NCBI GenBank assembly: GCA_038496445.1
Contig: JALMLS010000354.1
Coordinates: 372,001 to 436,000 of the forward strand
Source of the DNA: Trichosphaerium sp. ATCC 40318
Lineage: Eukaryota; Protista; Tubulinea
Direction: 5' to 3'
Length of the DNA: 64,000 nucleotides
Positions 7,390-55,819 of the stretch are shown here, in pieces. Both the position numbers and the translations under genes were made by a program. The notes under the pieces were generated by a model, which saw nothing but the letters and a program-made list of their open reading frames with translations, was not told where the DNA came from and did not search any database. Position 1 is the stretch's first letter, and each line of letters opens with the position of its first letter.

Positions 7390-10300
7390 ATGCTTCGCTT
7401 CCAAACGTGGTCTAGTCGCGCTACATGTCATTGTAAGCGCTCTATGCGTAGAGAACGGCCTAGGCGTATATCACTCTTCCCTGAAGTGAGTTAACAAGGT
7501 TTGTAACACAGCACCTACTAAAACGAACAATAGCCCACCCGTGATGAAGTCAACCTAAAGGAGCAGAGCAAACAACGCTACGACAAATATTTTGACGCAG
7601 TGTTTCGCGATTTTGATCCAAAGGACAAGTATGAGGCTAAGCATGGATTGCGTGGCACTGAGTCGTATAAAGTGCAGCAACAAATGATAAAAAGTTTGAG
7701 GCTTAAAAACCATATGGGCGTAATCAACACGTTTAATTACACATTCGAGGTACATACATGATAAATACAATGATAATTGGAACGAAATAATAAGATTGCC
7801 TTAAAAAGCTCATAAATTCTTTCAAATACTGTTTCAATGCACTAAACGCGCTTGTTTATTGCGTAAAACGAATAGTTTCTACGTGTCTGGAATGACCTCA
7901 CAAACAATTTAGAATCGTATAATGAGGACTCCACGAATGTATTTATGGGCTCTTGTATCTAATGAAGCATTGGGGATGCCTATAAGACATATTCTGGTTT
8001 ATTTGTCAAGAGAAACTACATCAGAATTTAAGCCTGCTCAAGAAACTCTAAAGTACTGCTTGGATACTCTTCTAAGGACAGCTTGTAAGTTTGGAAATGA
8101 AGGATATGGAGACGAAGATAGTGTCTCGCAATCACGTACGTACAAACCGAATACAATCGCAACGAACATTTTGACACGTCAAAATGTCAAAAATCCGCCA
8201 ACTTTTTTACAGAAAAAAAACCGATTTTTGTTTTTGACATTATCTGTTCCCTTTTATCTAATATGGATCTCTACCAAAGAAACCTAACTTACTTTATACT
8301 AGTGAATAAGGTTTTACTTTATTTTCAGCAAAATCAACGCGTAGAGCCTTCACTGTCAAATTGGGATCGTGTTATTAGAATATATACTGCCTGTGGTGAT
8401 CACCGCCTTGCTATCGATGTTATAAAGAACCTTGGCAAACAAAAGATGCAAATTGGCGTTTATACCTTTAATGCGTTTCTTGATGGTGCTAGAATTGCTG
8501 GAAACTTTGACGTGGCAAGGGTTGTTGCCGACGAGATGATTTCGCGAGAAATACCTTTTAATAAGCTTTCTATTGCTCTATTGTACAAGACAGTTACAAA
8601 ATACGACGAGTACTGTCTCGTACTCGAAAAATTCGAGCCGCTGGCTGTATGGGAGAACAGTACGTGTTTTTCTTTTTTGACGAATTGTCATACCATTTCC
8701 ATGTGTAAACTACGCGCAGGTTGCTAACTACTTGCTTTTTTTTTTGTAGGTATTTACATGCATCGTGTTTATGCTCTTTGTAGACTAGGAAAACTCTTGG
8801 ACGCTTGGAAAGTACGTTAATAAGACTACTAGTTTTTGTAAAGAAAAAGAAAAAATAGTTTCCCTTGTTGACATTCTTTGTAGGCGTATGAGTTCGCACT
8901 CAATTCATATGCTGTACCTGATGCTGATACACTAAATATCATGCTTGAAAAAGCAATAGAAAAAAGTTATGTTGTAGACGCACTTACACTGTTCTTTGAG
9001 ACACTAGATCGTGGTATTATGGTAGACGTGTACGCTTCATGTTGACTTTAAAAAACCCCGTCTTTCTTTATTGTAGACTGGTTGCATAATGAAACTCACA
9101 ATTTGTCTTAGTACGCATGTTCAAATGCTAATGGAGTTGTATTTTGTACATAAAACACAACAAAACGAAACGATTTTGAGACGAATTTTGGCTTATCAGC
9201 CAGAGCCTTTACTTTATGCATATGCTATAAGACGATATGCAGAGATAGGTAATAATCAAATATTTTAGAGGAAGAAAAAAGACATTGCAATTTTGACATG
9301 TGTCAAAGAAACCATTTTTGTTTTTAGTTTTTTTTTTTTTTTTCAAAACTCTTGTTTGTATTGAACTTAACTTCTTTTCTAGAGAGATATGATGAATCTA
9401 AGAGGCTTTATGATCTATTCAATAAGAATGTTGAGATTGCAGATAGTGATCTCAAAGCTGCAAGTCGGATTACAACTGATGAGAACCAAGGTAATAGACA
9501 ACCCTTCATTTTTAATTTTTATTTTCTTTTTTGAATACAATCTCTTCAGAAAATTTTGGGTAAATGTACTCACAAATACTAGTTGTTGCACAAGCTATCA
9601 TATATGCTTCATCAAAAAATAATGACTTTGAGTTTGCCCGTGAAGTATTTGAGAACGCGCGATCTCGCCTTGTTATGGTATGGTTTTAGTTTTTTTTCAT
9701 TATCTATTTTTCCAATACATCTTCGTTAACAGTAAATTGACAACTTGACGTCATTTCAGAGACTTTAGATATTTATGTTACTTTGTTAGGACACTGTAAG
9801 AGAGATAATAGAAGCAGCAAGAACAAAAGAAGACTATAATTATGTTAAAGCATTGTTTGAAGAGTTATATGAGAGTAAAAGAAGCAGACTTTGGCGTGAG
9901 ATGCTTGTATCTTCTCTAACTGTATCAGCTGTTAATGGTATGGGTTTTTTTTTAAAACTCAAGACAGTTTTTAGAGAGGGCTTCTTACACTGTTTTCTAA
10001 CTTGTTACCCCTAGTTGGTGATATTGACGCCGCCATGGAAATACTAACTAATATTGTTAAAAATGACGAAGATTTGGATCAATTTAACGTTGCTCCATTC
10101 ATGCCAATCTTACAGTGTACGCGCCAAGTTTTTTGAGTTTTTTTTTTTGGCGTGACTTATCAAAAGAATTGGTTGGACTTTTATTTAACCCTTTTATATT
10201 GTTTTCTTTACTACTACTTGCTTGCTGGTGTACTCACTAATTTTTTTTGTTAAGTTTTCATTACGAACCGTCAATTCGATAATGCTTTTGATATTCTCAA

Positions 10301-23283: not shown

Positions 23284-23521
23284 TGATTGACTTTATGTCA
23301 CACGTTGTATTTTAACTAAATTTATTTATTTTCACCAATGTGTTCTATCACATAATCTTCGAGTTATGACTGTCCCTTAGTGCATAGCATATTTTGTCTA
23401 TCGAGCGTGATTTTGCATTATTGCTCTTCGTAAATACCGTTAAACATGAATATTGGCGTGTGCAGTTAAGTGTTGTTCTCAGAACATTTGTTTGTGAAAC
23501 TAACTGGCGAATGTGTCACGT

Positions 23522-26204
23522 ATGCGTTCTATTCGCGCTGTGACAAGTCGAAATGCGTTTAAGCGTACACATAGGCGTATTTTGAATGATATTGGAAAAA
23601 AATTACGTCTAAACCACTTGGACGATTGGTACCGCGTCACTGCTACCGATGCGATTAACCGTGGGGCTTCTTTCGTAAAGTAAGTTACAGTTTATGTAAA
23701 CATACTTTAAACTGCGCTGAGTGGCCTATAACCCTTATGCACATTATAGCACAGTGTTTAACGGATCAATTTATAAATGTTTGTCACGAACGTACCCACA
23801 ACACGCCTGGGAAGCTCAAAAATTCATGTGCGAATTGTTTTCAAGTGTTTTGAACCGCCACTTAATTCTTGTACAGCCAAGTCCCTCAAATGTATTGGCA
23901 AACAGCCAGCAACATCCGTAAAGCTGTTGATGATGTTGGTAAGGCTTTAAACGTTAAAGTACTTGATGACTGGTATAAAACAAACTATTTTAAAGTTGTT
24001 AGTGAAGGAGGCAAATCGTTAATGTATGTGTATCTTACTTGTAAGGTAGCTTGTACAAGGACTAACAGAGGCACTCTAGGAATATATATAATGGTTCTAT
24101 ATCTGCTTGTTTATTTGATGTTTACTCTTATCACGTGTGGCACGAGTGGAAGTTCGGGTATGCGTTTGTTTTCTGATTTAATTCTTGTTTTTCTTTTCTT
24201 CTTTTGTTAGTATTCTTCCTGCCTTGAGGTCCTAAGAGAAGCATTATTTGTATTACAAATCCTTGATTTATTCTCAATACTTAAGAACAATTCAACTATA
24301 GTAATGGTTTGACATCGACAAGAGAATGTGTTGTTCTCGAATTTTTTTTTTCTTCAAGTTACAGTCATTGACAGTTTGTTTCTTATAGTCACACACCACT
24401 TAATTTTTGGGATAATGAAGACAACCACAAAAGAGCTTTAGATGACCTCGGACGTATACTTAACTATAAGCAATTATCTGATTGGTACAATGTTCACATT
24501 GATGATTTCAGTAAAAATTATCTCGGTCAGTTACTTGCGTACGCTAAAAATAAGTCTTCTAACTCTGTATCATTAACGCCTTTATAGGAACGAATATAAT
24601 AGTTCTATATCTTCTTGTCTAAAGTCAGTATACCCTCACTTTGATTGGCAATTCAAGTACGTCAAGTCAGTTCCTTGGGTTGTCAATGAAGTCCAAAATT
24701 TAATTATATGTGATGATGGATCTTTACAGCGTTTTGTTTAGTAAAGGAGATGATGAATACAAGATAACACTTTTGCATTCGTATGAGAAATCACTGCAAT
24801 TAAAGACTCTAGATGATTGGAGTACCATAACTACAAAGAATCGGGAATTAATCGGTTCCAGTCTTGCACTAGGGTACTTTGCTTTTTTTTTGTAGCGGAA
24901 CTTTTACCCCACACAGTATTTTACCACACCCACCTTGAAAATATTTTGGTTGGTGCGCACTCCTCATAATATATTCTGTGTGTAAATTAATGGGACGCCA
25001 CTATGCCTTCCTCCTGGCACACATGATGCATAGTAGTACTAATCAACAATGTCTTTGAGGGTTTTTTTTGGCAATCACTTGCAATGTCAATTGTTGATTT
25101 TATTTATCTTTATCGTAGGTATGGCACTTTGAACAAAGCTCTACATAAAATATACCCCTTGTACAATTGGCCAAAAGTGGGTATAATTACGACTGGTTAT
25201 TGGGAAAGTAAGACAACACAAAAGGCTTTTCTTCAAAAAATTAAAGAGAAATTGGGAATCACACGTGCTGAACTCTGGTAAGATCCACTGATATTGTTAA
25301 CTAAGGTTGATATATATTAACTTTTTCATCGGTTAGGTATCGTGTATCTGCAACTATTCTTAGAGACAATGGAGGTACTGGATTCCATAGCTATTGGCCA
25401 CATATCTTGGAAAATTTTGAACCCAATTTTTCTTGGGACTGGTCAAAGTTTTCGTTCGTTGGTAAAGCGTCAAAGCAAAGGTACTTTTTTCATGTTTCTT
25501 ATAAAGGCCTTGGTTCTCATAGATAATTGTAATAGATTACTGGTCCAAATAGTAAAGGAGATTTTCCCAAATTGTGAAGTTTTCGAACAACACGTTGTTG
25601 GTATTCTATCTCTTTACAATGTTGATTTATCAGTTGATGTTTATGTTCCTTCATATAACATAGCAATAGAGTATCAAGGTAATACATCATTCAATCAATC
25701 ATTGTCTCTGAAAGAAACTTAAAATGAGCTTATTTTAAAGCGTATCTTTTTTGTAAGTTTTTTTTGTTAACTGTTTATTAATAGGAGAGCAACATTATTC
25801 TGATTATGTATATAGTGGCCTATTTACAGATAGTCAAAAAGCAATAGACACAGAAAAGAGGCAAAAATGTATTGAGAACAGTGCGTGTCATGAGAGAACA
25901 TCTTTCTCACTTTTTACTCTTTTTTCACATTTTAATGGCTAAAACTCTTCAGATATTTGTTTAGTGCCTATACCCTACTGGTGGAAAGGAGACATAGAAT
26001 CAGTAATTTCCACTATAAATTTCTTTAAGGGAGACCACATTATTAATCGAGATTCAAATGGTGCTTTACCTTTGCTCGAGAAAGACCAGAAAAAAAGTAT
26101 GTATCTTTTTTATTTTTTGTTGCTTGCAATGCTAATAACTATACACAGTGGATAAAACTCTAATGGGCCCTTCACACCACACGTTCCTGCAACTTGTAAA
26201 TTAG
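23522..26204 (+). CDS. Tandem Trp-rich repeat protein (5 x ~75 aa, LDDWY...YP..W) with C-terminal PD-(D/E)xK-like (RAP/Vsr-type) domain
   Basis: Manual splicing gives one continuous ORF; C-terminal SVDVYVPSYNIAIEYQGEQHY...DTEKRQKCIENNICLVPIPYWW; Arg-rich presequence-like N-terminus. Confidence 0.75.
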
Positions 26205-26659
26205 TTTGTATTATATAATGGTGCTAAGCAACTCCTTGTACTGTACCAATTTTCTTGTTATTTTCTTTACGTCATCAGTCATGCTCATGATGCGCTTTTC
26301 ACTATTCAAACCACCTTTGGGCAGTTACAAATACTGTAGTTGAAGTAATATAATTTGACTGTTCAGATAAAACCCTCTACAACACCGCATTACCTTAGCT
26401 TTTGTAAATACATATCACATAGAATCTGTAGAGAAACTCAAGTACTAGCCAAGACAGAAGACTATTAATATCTAAAGTGTTGTTCCTTCTTTAAGCTGTG
26501 GACTGACTATATCACGTGCTAACTTGAAACAGTTCACGTTTTTATTTTATTTACACCACATGTTAGTGCTCATTAGTACAAACGCACATTAAATCTGCCA
26601 TCATCAGATCTATGATGGGTGACAAGGTGTTGCCTTGGCGAGGTGGATAGTAACTTTTA

Positions 26660-32135: not shown

Positions 32136-32837
32136 TCTACCTGGAGAGGCCGCACTTCCTGCAAGAGCGTCTACTAGCAAAGTTATGATCGCCACAACCG
32201 CTGCACATCCAATCACCTGATGACATGCTTAGAAAAGAACTCTAAAACAATAGTGAATACATACCTCTCTTGAAGGAACCCTGGCTCTTCGTCTTTTTAC
32301 CCTATACCACAAGTAAACCCAAACACCCATTCAACATTAAAAAGAAAAAAATCCACTGTCATCAACAGGCACAAATGAAAAAAGATAAAAAAAAATGCAA
32401 CACTCACTGTTTTGGATAGATTACATTTTCTGCATACAGAACGTGATCTAAAGTTTAGCTCTCCGCATCCACTGCAATACCAATCTCCAATTACGATCGT
32501 AGAGTTGGAAGGCATGGAAGACTGACCTTTTGGTAGCCTGCATTTAAAGCAGTCTGTTCGACTCTTAAAATTAAGCGTTTTGCAAGATTCTACTGCACAA
32601 ATCCAATCACCAGGCTCTGCAGTCTGCTTTGCTGCTGGTTTCTTTGTATAAGAACCTACCTTTGGTATAATGTGAGCCCGTTTATTGCTTTGATGACCAA
32701 AAAACAGTAGAGATAAAGGGTACCTGTACAGTGCGAGGTTTTTTGCATTTGAAACAAATTGTTCTCTTAGCGAAGTTATCTTTGCCACATGAATAGCACC
32801 TCCAATCACCTGGTTTTAATGAGATTGCACGAGACAT
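32136..32837 (-). CDS. RanBP2-type zinc-finger protein (4 fingers), likely RNA-binding
   Basis: Four GDWxCxxC...NFxxRxxCxKC fingers after splicing (GDWRCYSC, GDWICAVESC, GDWYCSGC, GDWMCSGC). Confidence 0.9.
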
Positions 32838-51319: not shown

Positions 51320-52261
51320 CTAACGGATAATACGAGATGCTCCATCAAGTCCTCTTACTCCTTCATCTGTTACTGAAGTATGTATAAGATTTATAGTGTG
51401 AACTCCAGCGAGAGCCTTAATGCCTTCATCTGTTACTGAAGTATCCCAAAGATAAATAGTATGGACTCCAGCAAGTGTTTTAACTCCTTCGTCTGTCACT
51501 GAAGTGTAATTAAGATAAATGGCATGGACTCCAGCAAGTGCTTTGACTCCTTCGTCTGTTACTGAAGTATTATCAAGATAAATAGTATGCACTCCAGCAA
51601 GCGATTTGATCCCTTCATCTGTTACTATAGTATTACTAAGACTAATAGTATGAGCTCCAGCAAGTGCTTTGACACCTTCATCTGTCACTGAAGTATTAGC
51701 AAGATAGATAGTATGGACTCCGGCAAGTGCTTTGACACCTTCATCAGTTACTGAAGTATTAACAAGATAGATAGTATGGACTCCAGCAAGTGCTTTGACA
51801 CCTTCATCTGTTACTGAAGTATGTATAAGATTTATAGTGTGAACTCCAGCGAGAGCCTTAATGCCTTCATCTGTTACTGAAGTAGCATGAAGGAGAATAG
51901 TATGAACACCAGCAAGTGCTTTAACGCCTTCATCAGTTATTTCTGACTTGAGATTAAGGTTAATAGCATGTGCACCAGCAAATTGCTTTATAATGCTGTC
52001 ATCAACACGCCCAATTAAGACGATGTTGGTGTTTTTCAAAATACCCACGTGTTTTCTAGCTTCTTTTGCTTGAGTTAATGTGCGAATCCTAATAGTATGG
52101 TACCCAATAATATCATGAACGATAGAAGCAAGGAAATGACATGTTTGACAAGCTGCAAATCGTGATTTGGTTGTTTGGCGCAATATATGAGCTAATATCT
52201 CTGTAGGCAGTTGAAACAATGTTGTACAAGTGGTATTGTCACACTTTGAGGTAGATAGCAT
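51320..52261 (-). CDS. Intronless F-box + 21-aa leucine-rich-repeat protein
   Basis: F-box LFQLPTEILAHIL...CQTCHFL; nine near-identical GVHTIxLxxTSVTDEGVKALA units (63-nt period) plus one 22-aa unit. Confidence 0.9.
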   Translation of the reverse strand: MLSTSKCDNTTCTTLFQLPTEILAHILRQTTKSRFAACQTCHFLASIVHDIIGYHTIRIRTLTQAKEARKHVGILKNTNIVLIGRVDDSIIKQFAGAHAINLNLKSEITDEGVKALAGVHTILLHATSVTDEGIKALAGVHTINLIHTSVTDEGVKALAGVHTIYLVNTSVTDEGVKALAGVHTIYLANTSVTDEGVKALAGAHTISLSNTIVTDEGIKSLAGVHTIYLDNTSVTDEGVKALAGVHAIYLNYTSVTDEGVKTLAGVHTIYLWDTSVTDEGIKALAGVHTINLIHTSVTDEGVRGLDGASRIIR

Positions 52262-54339: not shown

Positions 54340-55635
54340 TTAATAAAAATCAGGCCAAAATTCTTCATCAGTATTTTTACATTGTAGATAATTAACCACC
54401 ATTCTCTTTGTTATTTGAGTGCCACGATATTCAATGCAATCAATACTTGTTAATTTAATAACACCCTCATCTGTGATTTGAAAGCAGTCTGTGAGGCGAA
54501 TTTTCTTAACACCGATAAGACTGCTCACTCCTTTGTCTGTTATCTTTTTGCAGCCACGAAGACTAATAATTTTAGCACCCCTCAAAGAGCATAAACCCTT
54601 GTCTGTCACATTTGTGTAATTAATAAAAATTGTATGTACTCCAGCAAGTGCCTTTAAAGTACTATCATCAACACAGTCAACATGAGAAATATCAATCACT
54701 TTTACACCTGCCAATTGTTTTATCACATCATTTGATATCAATTTACAAGCATGCAAATCAATATGATGTACACCTGCAAAGCATGATATAGTATCGTCTG
54801 TTAATTGTGTACACTCATAAAGCTCTATACAAGATATACCAGCCAAAAGTTTCAAGACATTGTTTGATATTTGAGTACAGTCATCAAGACCAATTTTTTT
54901 AATTTTGTGAGTTGTTTGATTTTGTGTTAACAGATACTTTACTCCTTCATCTGTAATTCTCTTACAGTTACTAAGACATATGAAACTTGCATTTGTTAGT
55001 GCTCTTACACTTTTATCCGTTATATCACATGCATCAAGCTGTATCTTGTGTACATTACCTGAAATGGCAACGACACCTTTGTCAGTGATATTGTCACAAC
55101 GAGATAAGTTGATAGTATGAACTCCAGAGAGTGCCGCAAGTCCTTTATCTGTTATGTCTGTCATTGAAATATCAATAGTATGAATAATTCCAAGCTCTTG
55201 AAGCCACTCATCTTTTACATGACTGATTGGTATGCTTAATGTATGAATACCTTGAAGTAACTTAAATCCCGATCCTGTCAAGGTGCATCCACGTTCACGT
55301 ATTTTCGTTTCCAGATGATGTACACCTGAAATATGTTCTAACATCATATCTATTAATAAAAAACTACGCCTTATTTCAAGGTGATGAACACCAGATAGAT
55401 TTTTAAAGTCATCTTCAGTCATTTTAAAATTAATAATCACTTTTGTATTTTTTAAAAGAGGACTTTCATGTAGTTTGAGTAGACTTTCTCTTGACTTTAC
55501 GTTCACTGTTAAATACCCCAAATGCTTTAAAATGATTGTAGAAAACAGTTTACAAACAAATGTTGCTGATATACGACATTTCTTGTCTAAAAACGCCAGT
55601 ATACAAAACATTATTTCTGTCGGTAGCCAAAGCAT
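54340..55635 (-). CDS. Intronless F-box + cysteine-containing LRR protein
   Basis: F-box MLWLPTEIMFCILAFLD...VCKLF; multiple GVHTINLSRCDNITDKGV-type LRRs; 1.3-kb uninterrupted ORF. Confidence 0.9.
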   Translation of the reverse strand: MLWLPTEIMFCILAFLDKKCRISATFVCKLFSTIILKHLGYLTVNVKSRESLLKLHESPLLKNTKVIINFKMTEDDFKNLSGVHHLEIRRSFLLIDMMLEHISGVHHLETKIRERGCTLTGSGFKLLQGIHTLSIPISHVKDEWLQELGIIHTIDISMTDITDKGLAALSGVHTINLSRCDNITDKGVVAISGNVHKIQLDACDITDKSVRALTNASFICLSNCKRITDEGVKYLLTQNQTTHKIKKIGLDDCTQISNNVLKLLAGISCIELYECTQLTDDTISCFAGVHHIDLHACKLISNDVIKQLAGVKVIDISHVDCVDDSTLKALAGVHTIFINYTNVTDKGLCSLRGAKIISLRGCKKITDKGVSSLIGVKKIRLTDCFQITDEGVIKLTSIDCIEYRGTQITKRMVVNYLQCKNTDEEFWPDFY

Positions 55636-55819
55636 CTCAAATGTCCTGTGAGTACGGTTAGCCAAAACAGAGTAAAAATAACAGGGGCAAAGGCGATTAT
55701 GCAGAACACATACTCTGGTGGCTCGGTTAGTGTATGAAGCATGCCTTTAGAGCAATTGTCTACTGAATTGTTGGGAAAGTAACTGTGGTACTTAAGGGAG
55801 TTGACTCCACAGAGCTATT

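What the first reader, a model, noticed from the sequence alone, without database searches (positions are those of the whole stretch)
23522..26204. Modular Trp-rich repeat array fused to a PD-(D/E)xK-like nuclease domain, with a mitochondrial-type presequence
Seen: hand-splicing gives five ~75-aa repeats with consensus FW....hK.hhDDhG..L....LDDWY.V....h...GG.SLh..YNGSI..CL..VYP.H.W...KF. Cores are LDDWYRVT, LDDWYKTN, LSDWYNVH, LDDWSTIT and AELWYRVS. They are followed by SVDVYVPSYNIAIEYQGEQHY...DTEKRQKC...LVPIPYWW. The first ~22 aa (MRSIRAVTSRNAFKRTHRRILN) are Arg-rich with no acidic residue. Established: D...ExxG..H plus a C-terminal hIPYW is the signature of RAP/DUF559/Vsr-like restriction-endonuclease folds, and helical repeats plus RAP is the design of FASTK/OPR/HPR organellar RNA factors. 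These repeats are about twice as long as PPR, OPR or HPR units and match none of them by eye. Inference: a distinct modular nucleic-acid-binding repeat plus nuclease family, possibly with a recognition code, acting on organellar RNA or DNA.
Basis: partly seen in the sequence, partly recalled or inferred. Interest (0 to 1): 0.8.

Follow-up and report, generated by a model that had tools for sequence, protein, structure and literature searches.

The report
Repeat-guided Vsr-like nuclease gene
This is a real, expressed 13-exon gene for a protein with five small helical repeat modules and an apparently active DNA-repair-type nuclease domain; it belongs to a large but unstudied family shared by amoebae, giant viruses and bacteria, and it may cut mitochondrial DNA or RNA.

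Summary
A 13-exon GT-AG gene (23522-26204, +) encodes 517 aa. Transcript contigs confirm 10 of 12 splice junctions and join the repeats to the C-domain in frame. One acceptor needed correcting, to 24742.

The protein has five ~75-aa repeats (E 1e-9 to 2e-24 against a family HMM) followed by a C-domain. A model of a homologue's C-domain folds like Vsr, I-Bth0305I, DUF559 and RAP nucleases (Z 9-11). The window's own C-domain keeps the conserved Asp, Glu, His, Asp and Lys.

Each repeat is a self-contained five-helix module, not a PPR/OPR/HPR hairpin. It has no significant match among solved structures. It is not unique, though:
- At least 3,941 protein clusters carry it, with 2-25 repeats each.
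- They come from amoebozoans, heteroloboseans, giant viruses and genuine bacteria.
- It is structurally akin to the Pfam family DUF4046.
- Some relatives carry an ATP-dependent DNA ligase domain.

By sequence, the nuclease sits closest to phage homing endonucleases and DUF2726, not RAP. The N-terminus looks like a mitochondrial presequence, as in many relatives, but I could not run a targeting predictor.

Best reading: a repeat-guided, probably mitochondrial endonuclease, with DNA somewhat more likely than RNA as target. Nucleic-acid binding, a recognition code and localisation all remain inferences. First-stage notes of this scan report paralogs elsewhere in this genome.

The parts
23522..26204 (+). 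Whole coding region: 13 exons, 517 aa, ATG to TAG
   Evidence: 10 of 12 junctions seen in RNA contigs
23522..23679 (+). Exon 1: basic N-terminus plus first half of repeat 1
   Evidence: donor AAA|gtaagt; this junction is not covered by RNA contigs
23750..23827 (+). Exon 2: second half of repeat 1
   Evidence: 3' junction 23827>23877 seen
23877..24023 (+). Exon 3: first half of repeat 2
   Evidence: junctions seen
24080..24157 (+). Exon 4: second half of repeat 2
   Evidence: junctions seen
24389..24538 (+). Exon 5: first half of repeat 3
   Evidence: junctions seen
24588..24656 (+). Exon 6: second half of repeat 3
   Evidence: junctions seen
24742..24873 (+). Exon 7: first half of repeat 4; acceptor corrected from 24730
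   Evidence: joint 24656>24742
25119..25277 (+). Exon 8: second half of repeat 4 plus start of repeat 5
   Evidence: junctions seen, in both runs for 24873>25119
25337..25480 (+). Exon 9: rest of repeat 5 and linker
   Evidence: junctions seen
25536..25678 (+). Exon 10: C-domain part 1, helix plus strands ending in ...SVDVYVPSYNIAIEYQ
25785..25880 (+). Exon 11: C-domain part 2, GEQHY...IDTEKRQKCIEN
25953..26096 (+). Exon 12: C-domain part 3, ICLVPIPYWWKGD..., and tail
   Evidence: 5' junction seen; the RNA contig ends at 26074
26149..26204 (+). Exon 13: last 18 aa and the stop codon. Inferred. If the last intron is retained, the frame ends at 26155 instead
   Evidence: no RNA coverage
23522..23587 (+). 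aa 1-22: basic, acid-free, strongly amphipathic N-terminus, a candidate mitochondrial presequence that overlaps helix 1 of repeat 1
23552..23877 (+). Repeat 1 (aa 11-79), lacking HMM positions 1-9
   Evidence: E 1.3e-18
23878..24389 (+). Repeat 2 (aa 80-154)
   Evidence: E 2.1e-23
24390..24745 (+). Repeat 3 (aa 155-228)
   Evidence: E 2e-24
24746..25179 (+). Repeat 4 (aa 229-291), the most divergent
   Evidence: E 1.4e-09
25186..25454 (+). Repeat 5 (aa 294-363)
   Evidence: E 8.6e-16
25458..26023 (+). C-terminal Vsr/EDxHD-like PD-(D/E)XK nuclease domain (aa 365-475)
   Evidence: 110.6 bits, E 2.9e-36 against a family HMM built without window rows; fold of a homologue's model
25636..25638 (+). 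Asp406, in a nearly invariant family column; by the Asp-to-His spacing I equate it with Vsr D51 and I-Bth0305I D196
   Evidence: PMC3239194, PMC11879112
25669..25671 (+). Glu417 of the E-Y-Q-G motif, nearly invariant in the family
25793..25795 (+). His423, 17 residues after Asp406, the same spacing as D196 to H213 in I-Bth0305I; by that spacing I equate it with Vsr H69
   Evidence: PMC3239194
25847..25858 (+). Asp441-x-x-Lys444 (IDTEK), nearly invariant D..K

Best explanation
This is an expressed nuclear gene for a repeat-guided endonuclease.

**Shown**
- It encodes five tandem ~75-aa modules. In models of homologues each module is an independent five-helix bundle held by conserved Trp, Tyr and Phe.
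- A C-terminal Vsr/EDxHD-type PD-(D/E)XK domain follows. It retains the residues that are nearly invariant across the family (Asp406, Glu417, His423, Asp441, Lys444).
- By the 17-residue Asp-to-His spacing, I equate Asp406 and His423 with the catalytic Asp and His of Vsr and I-Bth0305I.

**Inferred mechanism**
- The module array binds a stretch of nucleic acid through conserved basic positions (1, 14 and 73 of the repeat) and variable surface positions.
- This places the nuclease so that it makes a metal-dependent cut.
- I judge DNA the more likely substrate, because of the nuclease's nearest sequence kin, the ligase-bearing relatives and the bacterial homologues.
- The basic, amphipathic, acid-free N-terminus probably sends the protein into mitochondria, so the likely target is mitochondrial DNA.

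The gene is one member of a large, patchily distributed family. That family most likely came from bacterial or viral mobile-element nucleases.
For: **Gene and expression:**

**Repeats and family size**
- Repeats are significant against the family HMM.
- 3,941 cluster representatives match at E<=1e-3, and the proteins examined carry 2-25 repeats.
- 129 of 225 relatives examined end in the same C-domain.

**C-domain fold** (model of homologue P0132): Z 10.0 to Vsr, 9.8 to I-Bth0305I, 9.8 to DUF559 (3hrl), 9.3-10.9 to RAP domains.

**C-domain sequence kinship**
- Pfam DUF2726 matches 24 of 55 members, best E 5e-6.
- PHROG 'homing endonuclease' and 'intron encoded nuclease' families match at 1e-10 (P0132) to 2e-18 (bacterial homologues).
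- Viral structure matches are phage homing endonucleases, Vsr and giant-virus 'restriction endonucleases'.
- The window's domain keeps the conserved D, E, H, D and K. The D-to-H spacing of 17 equals that of I-Bth0305I D196/H213 (PMC3239194).

**Pointers to DNA**
- Homologues carry an ATP-dependent DNA ligase domain with an intact KxDG motif. It matches the phage DNA ligase family at 1.4e-22.
- The full architecture occurs in genuine bacterial contigs: L001 has 6 repeats plus the C-domain, L002 has 3 plus the C-domain, and both have bacterial neighbour genes.

**Mitochondrial targeting**
- The window N-terminus has 7 K/R and 1 D/E in its first 25 aa. Its helical hydrophobic moment is in the top 0.2% of the protein.
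- N-terminal extensions of 91 homologues are depleted in D/E (6.4% against 11.8%) and enriched in R/K and S/T. 45 of 91 have no acidic residue in the first 15 aa, against 15% expected.
Against: - No experiment or direct prediction shows that the repeats bind nucleic acid. The single-repeat model has no significant match to any solved fold: best Z 4.2, Foldseek E>4.
- DNA versus RNA is not resolved. RAP domains of organellar RNA-binding proteins match the fold as well as Vsr does, and expanded families of presequence-bearing repeat proteins are typical of organellar RNA factors.
- The window's presequence-like stretch is short, about 10 aa before the first repeat begins. I could not run TargetP or MitoFates.
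- A Vsr-like pocket can be catalytically dead, as reported for FASTKD4 (PMC11879112).
- pTM 0.54 for the whole model means the relative arrangement of the modules is uncertain.
- The structure models are of homologues about 30% identical to the window's protein, not of that protein itself.
Confidence: 0.45

Rival explanations
1. It is a mitochondrial RNA-processing or RNA-stabilising factor that works like RAP proteins (FASTK, OPR-RAP, HPR-RAP). The repeat array would recognise a specific transcript site, and the Vsr-like domain would cut or hold the RNA.
For: - The C-domain model's best structural match is a region of a Toxoplasma mitoribosomal protein that I take to be a RAP domain (Z 10.9). 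FASTKD4 RAP scores Z 9.3.
- UniProt auto-labels MMETSP homologues as 'RAP domain-containing'.
- Homologue N-termini look like presequences.
- First-stage notes report many paralogs in this genome (unchecked). That is the pattern of PPR, OPR and HPR families.
- Canonical RAP proteins were reported undetectable in Amoebozoa and Excavata (PMC8190603), which would leave that role open.
Against: - Pfam RAP matched only one C-domain at E 0.031 and one other region at E 0.00089. DUF2726 and phage homing-endonuclease families match far better.
- Ligase-bearing relatives match DNA ligases, not RNA ligases.
- The identical architecture exists in bacteria.
- The repeat is not a solenoid hairpin.
Confidence: 0.3
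2. It is a selfish or defensive DNA nuclease that is not organellar. That is, a domesticated or still mobile homing-endonuclease-like gene, or an antiviral nuclease acting in the nucleus or cytoplasm, for example against giant viruses.
For: - The distribution is patchy across bacteria, giant viruses and protists.
- The nuclease is kin to homing endonucleases.
- Repeat number is highly variable, 2-25.
- In bacterial locus L001 the downstream gene, about 700 bp away, encodes a Schlafen/AlbA_2 protein with weak matches to pAgo-associated defence models.
Against: - The gene has 12 spliceosomal introns, is expressed, and does not sit in an intron or intein.
- No PADLOC defence model matches the protein.
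- N-termini of the window's protein and of many homologues look like mitochondrial presequences.
- No second copy and no transposon-like flanks lie next to it in the window.
Confidence: 0.15
3. It is a non-catalytic adaptor. The Vsr-like domain would serve only as a binding pocket, as proposed for FASTKD4, and the protein would scaffold other enzymes on a nucleic acid.
For: - FASTKD4 has a Vsr-like pocket but appears inactive (PMC11879112).
- 96 of 225 relatives lack the nuclease domain, though many of these are fragments.
Against: - FASTKD4 has Asn where Vsr has the catalytic His69 (PMC11879112). The window's protein keeps a His at the position I equate with it, together with the conserved Asp, Glu, Asp and Lys.
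- These columns are 90% or more conserved across the family, which argues for selection on catalysis.
Confidence: 0.1

Closest known systems
Pfam DUF4046 (PF13255), a bacterial domain of unknown function, mostly from Bacillota
   Same: - Arrays of the same small helical module. Foldseek matches the 5-repeat model to Bacillus-group and other 'DUF4046 domain-containing' proteins at E 5e-10 to 1e-7, probability 1.0.
- The ESM Atlas gives TM 0.61 over 205 residues to a Bacillota DUF4046 cluster and 0.62 to a Discosea cluster.
- 17 of 100 relatives carry a precomputed PF13255.12 hit.
- From memory, Pfam notes a conserved 'HPW' motif. This would correspond to E-H-P-W at repeat positions 66-69.
   Different: - With the local model PF13255.11, no single repeat matched and no whole protein reached the family's cut-off. 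The best was 17.7 bits against 22.8.
- The eukaryotic proteins add a Vsr-like nuclease or a ligase domain and presequence-like N-termini.
- DUF4046 itself has no known function, so membership explains nothing about mechanism.
EDxHD homing endonucleases (I-Bth0305I; PDB 3r3p)
   Same: - Layout: an N-terminal modular binding region followed by a C-terminal Vsr-like nuclease.
- Z 9.8 to 3r3p.
- PHROG 'homing endonuclease' families match the C-domain.
- Asp-to-His spacing of 17 residues, and a later conserved Asp (PMC3239194).
   Different: - The binding modules there are NUMOD/HTH motifs, not 75-aa five-helix repeats.
- Those genes sit inside group I introns or inteins of phage and bacteria. This one is a free-standing nuclear gene with 12 spliceosomal introns.
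RAP-domain organellar RNA-binding proteins (FASTK family, OPR-RAP, HPR-RAP)
   Same: - Helical repeats followed by a Vsr-like domain ending in a ...IPY.W-type strand.
- Fold match of Z 9.3-10.9.
- Probable organellar presequence.
- Multi-paralog family, according to first-stage notes I did not check.
   Different: - The Pfam RAP model does not recognise the domain.
- The repeats are autonomous 75-aa bundles, not 35-40-aa hairpins forming a solenoid.
- The candidate catalytic His is retained here, whereas FASTKD4 has Asn (PMC11879112).
Vsr, DUF559 and DUF2726 PD-(D/E)XK nucleases
   Same: - Same core fold: Z 10.0 to 1cw0 and 9.8 to 3hrl.
- DUF2726 matches 24 of 55 family C-domains.
- These families are classed within the PD-(D/E)XK superfamily in PMC3424549.
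   Different: - Matches are below or near Pfam thresholds.
- No Vsr zinc site or intercalating-Trp helix was examined.
- Those are mostly single-domain bacterial proteins without the repeat array.
Modular code proteins (TALE, PPR, PUF)
   Same: - Tandem arrays with variable repeat number, 2-25.
- A conserved scaffold with several high-entropy positions: 37, 57, 41, 46, 50 and 51.
   Different: - There is no evidence of one repeat per nucleotide, or of a two-residue code.
- Repeats within a protein are only about 30% identical.
- Module-to-module geometry is uncertain, with pTM 0.54.

Membership tests
PD-(D/E)XK superfamily, Vsr-like branch | Core alpha-beta-beta-beta-alpha-beta fold superimposable on Vsr, DUF559 or I-Bth0305I | tested here: met
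   The AF2 model of homologue P0132 has pLDDT 90. VIA Z is 10.0 (1cw0), 9.8 (3r3p) and 9.8 (3hrl) over 92-107 residues. The window's C-domain matches the same family HMM at E 2.9e-36.
PD-(D/E)XK superfamily, Vsr-like branch | Catalytic Asp, catalytic His and a downstream Asp present | tested here: met
   Asp406, His423 (+17) and Asp441 are retained, in columns at least 90% conserved. The spacing equals that of I-Bth0305I D196/H213 (PMC3239194). I infer the equivalence from this spacing and from conservation, not from a residue-level superposition.
PD-(D/E)XK superfamily, Vsr-like branch | Metal-dependent phosphodiester cleavage | not testable with these tools
   This needs a nuclease assay.
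RAP domain (PF08373) | Match to the Pfam RAP model above its gathering score | tested here: not met
   The window's exon pieces gave no hit. One of 55 family C-domains matched at E 0.031. One other region of a relative matched at E 0.00089.
RAP domain (PF08373) | Organellar localisation and RNA binding | not testable with these tools
   Only N-terminal composition statistics are available.
DUF4046 (PF13255) | Match to the Pfam model above its gathering score | tested here: inconclusive
   With the local PF13255.11 model the best score was 17.7 bits against a 22.8 cut-off, and none of 76 single repeats matched. Precomputed PF13255.12 hits are listed for 17 of 100 relatives.
DUF4046 (PF13255) | Same fold as DUF4046 proteins | tested here: met
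   Foldseek E 5e-10 to 1e-7, probability 1.0, against AFDB DUF4046 proteins. Atlas TM 0.61-0.62. Both sides are predicted models.
EDxHD homing endonucleases | Gene embedded in a group I intron or intein, with NUMOD-type binding motifs | tested here: not met
   It is a free-standing nuclear gene with 12 spliceosomal introns. No NUMOD hit was found in Pfam scans.
PPR / OPR / HPR alpha-solenoid repeat proteins | Two-helix hairpin units of 35-40 aa recognised by the family models | tested here: not met
   The units are 75 aa with five helices. No PPR, OPR or HPR Pfam hit was found in the protein or its relatives.
Mitochondrial presequence-bearing proteins | N-terminal basic, acid-free, amphipathic segment recognised by a targeting predictor | tested here: inconclusive
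   Composition and hydrophobic moment fit, and homologue statistics fit. TargetP and MitoFates were not available, and the segment overlaps repeat 1.

The most novel reading that the evidence does not exclude
The 75-aa DUF4046-type module is a previously uncharacterised modular reader of nucleic-acid sequence. It would use a fixed number of nucleotides per module and have a decipherable residue code. Amoebozoan and heterolobosean cells would use arrays of it to aim nucleases and DNA ligases at specific sites in mitochondrial genomes or transcripts. This would be a third natural programmable scaffold beside TALE and PPR/PUF, with a built-in way to cut and rejoin.
Probability: 0.12. Interest if true: 0.85.

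Novelty: new variant of a known kind. Interest (0 to 1): 0.55.

Why it matters
**What is already familiar.** The design of a modular binding array followed by a Vsr-like nuclease is known from phage EDxHD homing endonucleases and from organellar RAP proteins.

**What is new.** Here the array is built from a different, unstudied module, the DUF4046 type. The family has thousands of members, up to 25 modules per protein, and alternative nuclease or DNA-ligase domains. I found no paper about it in the searchable library.

**What would follow if the inferences hold**
- If the modules read sequence, this would be a new protein scaffold for targeting nucleic acids.
- If the proteins are mitochondrial, they could account for part of organellar genome or transcript maintenance. 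Canonical RAP proteins were reported undetectable in amoebozoans and excavates (PMC8190603).

**Evolution.** Near-identical architectures in genuine bacteria and in giant viruses make this a clear case for studying transfer and domestication of mobile-element nucleases.

Tried and rejected
- **Pfam on single exon translations:** nothing useful, because the pieces are too short. I could not submit the spliced protein to the remote tools, since it has no reference. Family, structure and library searches therefore used homologues (P0132, P0022 and others, about 30% identical). The window's protein was tied to them by local HMM searches.
- **Pfam on whole relatives and on 76 single repeats:** only sub-threshold scatter (Myb_Rap1, SAM_TNK, DUF4046). 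I do not read these as homology.
- **PDB sequence search with repeat and C-domain profiles:** no hit.
- **Fold search with the single-repeat model:** Foldseek against PDB and Swiss-Prot gave E>4. VIA wide gave a best Z of 4.2, to TetR HTH, Slx4 CCD, LOTUS and SAM domains. That is too weak to name a fold. I considered SAM-like or helix-hairpin-helix kinship and left it open.
- **PADLOC:** no defence-system model matches the protein.
- **Literature searches** for DUF4046, Q54JM7, and RAP with amoebozoan names: no description of this family.
- **Profile search for short bacterial DUF4046 proteins to run a profile-profile test:** returned only 15 short unnamed proteins, none carrying a DUF4046 label. 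The test was not done.
- **GIY-YIG in P0089:** its N-terminus looks GIY-YIG-like by eye, but neither Pfam nor PHROGs supports this.
- **Organism identity:** not established. Run labels were coded.
- **Second copy in the window:** none found.
Full report
**1.
- The region is eukaryotic DNA of about 34-36% G+C. Coding segments lie in three frames.
- Enumerating GT..AG introns that keep the frame gives one 13-exon model from the ATG at 23522 to the TAG at 26202-26204.
- Contigs of two public runs laid on 23400-26400 show 10 of the 12 junctions. One 1092-nt contig runs through exons 5 to 12, so it joins repeats 3-5 to the C-domain in frame.
- The contigs corrected one acceptor, from 24730 to 24742. 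The protein is 517 aa.
- The first and last introns have no RNA support. The last 18 aa are therefore provisional.
- The contigs differ from the window at about 1-2% of positions, so they come from another strain or a close relative.
- Every intron within the repeat region is in phase 2. In repeats 1-4 the introns fall at the same two places of the unit, after about position 49 and at the unit boundary. This fits growth of the array by duplication of a two-exon unit.

**2. The repeats are significant and define a very large family.**
- A profile made only from the first halves of the window's five repeats found 3,941 cluster representatives at E<=1e-3 among 1.84 billion proteins. Of these, 1,648 scored at E<=1e-10, with up to about 20 matched stretches per protein.
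- I built a 75-position HMM from about 1,000 such repeats. Its consensus is KVPKGFWKSKENQREFLDWLGKKLGIKSLEDWYKVTKKDIKKNGGSGLLKKYNGSLSKLLKSIYPEHEWKEWKLG.
- Against this HMM the window's protein has five hits, at E 1e-9 to 2e-24.
- The 225 relatives I examined have 2-25 repeats.
- Trp at positions 7, 32 and 69 and Phe at 74 are 80-96% conserved. Lys/Arg dominate positions 1, 14 and 73. The most variable positions are 37, 57, 41, 46, 50 and 51.
- This pattern is compatible with a conserved scaffold and a variable surface. It does not demonstrate a recognition code.

**3. What the repeat is.**
- The five-repeat-plus-C-domain model has pLDDT 90 and pTM 0.54. The single-repeat model has pLDDT 91 and pTM 0.76.
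- Each unit is a self-contained five-helix bundle. The array is therefore a string of small domains, not a PPR/OPR/HPR-type solenoid. The low whole-model pTM leaves the geometry between modules open.
- The single unit has no significant match in the PDB or Swiss-Prot AlphaFold models. Foldseek gives E>4, and the best VIA Z is 4.2, to TetR HTH, Slx4 CCD, LOTUS and SAM domains.
- No Pfam model reaches threshold on repeats or whole proteins.
- The array does match predicted structures of bacterial 'DUF4046 domain-containing' proteins, at Foldseek E 5e-10 to 1e-7 and Atlas TM about 0.61. A newer Pfam model version, PF13255.12, is recorded on 17 of 100 relatives.
- I therefore treat the repeat as a divergent branch of the DUF4046 superfamily, whose function is unknown.

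**4. What the C-domain is.**
- 129 of 225 relatives carry the same domain, usually at the C-terminus.
- Its conserved core is ...ELD.FIP.L.LAFEYQGEQHY...RD.EK...C...GI.LI.IPYWWD.
- The window's spliced product matches a family HMM built without window rows at 110.6 bits, E 2.9e-36. It keeps Asp406, Glu417, His423, Asp441 and Lys444.
- In the model the domain is helix, three strands, helix, strand, helix.
- It superimposes on a Toxoplasma mitoribosomal protein region (Z 10.9), which I take to be a RAP domain, and on E. coli Vsr (10.0), the homing endonuclease I-Bth0305I (9.8), a DUF559 protein (9.8) and the RAP module of FASTKD4 (9.3).
- By sequence it is nearest to Pfam DUF2726 (24 of 55 members, best E 5e-6). 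It is also near phage families annotated as homing or intron-encoded nucleases (E 1e-10 for P0132, down to 2e-18 for the bacterial homologues). Viral structure matches tell the same story.
- Pfam RAP is barely detectable.
- The Asp-to-His spacing of 17 equals that of I-Bth0305I D196/H213, the counterparts of Vsr D51/H69 (PMC3239194). FASTKD4, judged inactive, has Asn at that His position (PMC11879112). The window's domain therefore looks catalytically competent.

**5. Distribution and alternative extra domains.**
- Named sources include transcriptomes of Cavostelium apophysatum, Heterolobosea sp. BB2 and Physarum polycephalum, MMETSP protists and many metagenomes.
- AlphaFold-DB cluster hits, with organisms recalled from the accession numbers because the table masks them, include a likely giant-virus protein (E 3e-26), dictyostelid proteins, planctomycete proteins and bacterial 'DUF559 domain-containing' proteins of the same layout. 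The Atlas adds Nucleocytoviricota and Discosea.
- The nuclease motif occurs in hundreds of bacterial and archaeal genomes. Five loci match over repeats plus nuclease.
- I checked two of those loci. They encode 6 and 3 canonical repeats plus the C-domain, and they sit among ordinary bacterial genes, including a sigma-54 activator, a histidine kinase and a TRAP transporter.
- Three relatives carry an ATP-dependent DNA ligase domain with an intact KxDG motif. The Physarum one matches the phage DNA ligase family at 1.4e-22. This agrees with first-stage notes of ligase-bearing paralogs in this genome, which I did not check.

**6. Targeting.**
- The window's N-terminus is basic and acid-free for 22 residues. 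It contains the most amphipathic helix of the protein.
- Only about 10 residues precede the first repeat, which is truncated.
- Among 91 homologues with a real N-terminal extension, the extensions are depleted in Asp/Glu (6.4% against 11.8%) and enriched in Arg/Lys and Ser/Thr. Half have no acidic residue in the first 15 positions, against 15% expected. Many read like textbook presequences, including two of the ligase-bearing proteins.
- This supports mitochondrial import for much of the family. It is not a test.

**7. Mechanism and rivals.**
- *Shown:* an expressed gene, five modules, a Vsr-like fold in a homologue's model, conservation of the residues I equate with the Vsr and I-Bth0305I catalytic residues, and a wide family with nuclease or ligase domains.
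- *Inferred:* the modules bind nucleic acid and position the nuclease.
- I lean to DNA, at about 45% for mitochondrial DNA. My reasons are that the nuclease's closest sequence kin are DNA enzymes of mobile elements, that relatives carry a DNA ligase domain, and that bacteria hold the same architecture.
- A RAP-like RNA role stays close behind, at about 30%. Fold similarity cannot separate the two, and the family pattern resembles organellar RNA factors. Canonical RAP proteins were reported undetectable in Amoebozoa and Excavata (PMC8190603).
- A non-organellar selfish or defensive role (about 15%) and a non-catalytic adaptor role (about 10%) are not excluded.

**8. Novelty.**
- The parts are catalogued, as DUF4046 and as Vsr/DUF2726/DUF559-like, with automatic 'RAP domain-containing' labels.
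- The design principle is known from EDxHD homing endonucleases and RAP proteins.
- I found no paper on the repeat, on the fusion, or on its expansion in protists. The library does not cover all journals.
- I class it as a new variant of a known kind.

**9. Limits.**
- Remote searches and models used homologues about 30% identical to the window's protein.
- No targeting predictor, electrostatics calculation or model coordinates were available.
- The DUF4046 link rests on predicted structures and precomputed annotations.
- The organism was not identified.

Noticed in passing
window 8263-8727 (+): An ORF of 154 aa with PPR motifs (Pfam PPR_2 E 8.8e-06, PPR_3, PPR_long). It probably belongs to an organellar RNA-binding protein gene about 15 kb upstream of the finding.
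   Followed up: no
window 32297-32809 (-): An ORF with two RanBP2-type zinc fingers (Pfam Zn_ribbon_RanBP, E 4.1e-08).
   Followed up: no
window 51320-52261 (-) and 54340-55665 (-): Two long intronless ORFs with F-box plus LRR_6 repeats (E 1e-20 and 4e-16). This matches other first-stage notes on this window.
   Followed up: no
window 23680-25535 (introns of the repeat region): All introns in the repeat region are in phase 2. In repeats 1-4 they sit at the same two positions of the 75-aa unit. Repeat 5 has lost the unit-boundary intron and has one after the DW-motif Trp instead. This suggests array growth by duplication of a two-exon unit.
   Followed up: partly
P0089 residues 1-135 (a relative from the protein database): The N-terminal region before four repeats reads like a GIY-YIG nuclease motif by eye (KIYKI...IFIGST...L.KRL..H). 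Neither Pfam nor PHROGs confirmed it.
   Followed up: partly
L001 4233-5876 (+), deltaproteobacterial MAG contig: About 700 bp downstream of the bacterial 6-repeat nuclease gene lies a Schlafen AlbA_2 / HATPase_c_4 protein with weak PADLOC matches to pAgo-associated models. This may be a defence or mobile-island context.
   Followed up: partly
P0194, P0190, P0074, P0017, P0109 (N-termini): A subset of relatives shares a different conserved N-terminal motif (..K/RRLQQKAWD..ARYADL..PEW..) in place of a presequence-like extension. They may form a separate, perhaps non-organellar or non-eukaryotic, subfamily.
   Followed up: no
window 24388-26074 against run X2, and 25534-25674 against run X1: Transcript contigs differ from the window at about 1-2% (X2) and about 6% (one X1 contig) of positions. 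They include a second X1 form around 25572-25644 and a loose end at 25960. These probably come from other strains or species, or from paralogs.
   Followed up: no
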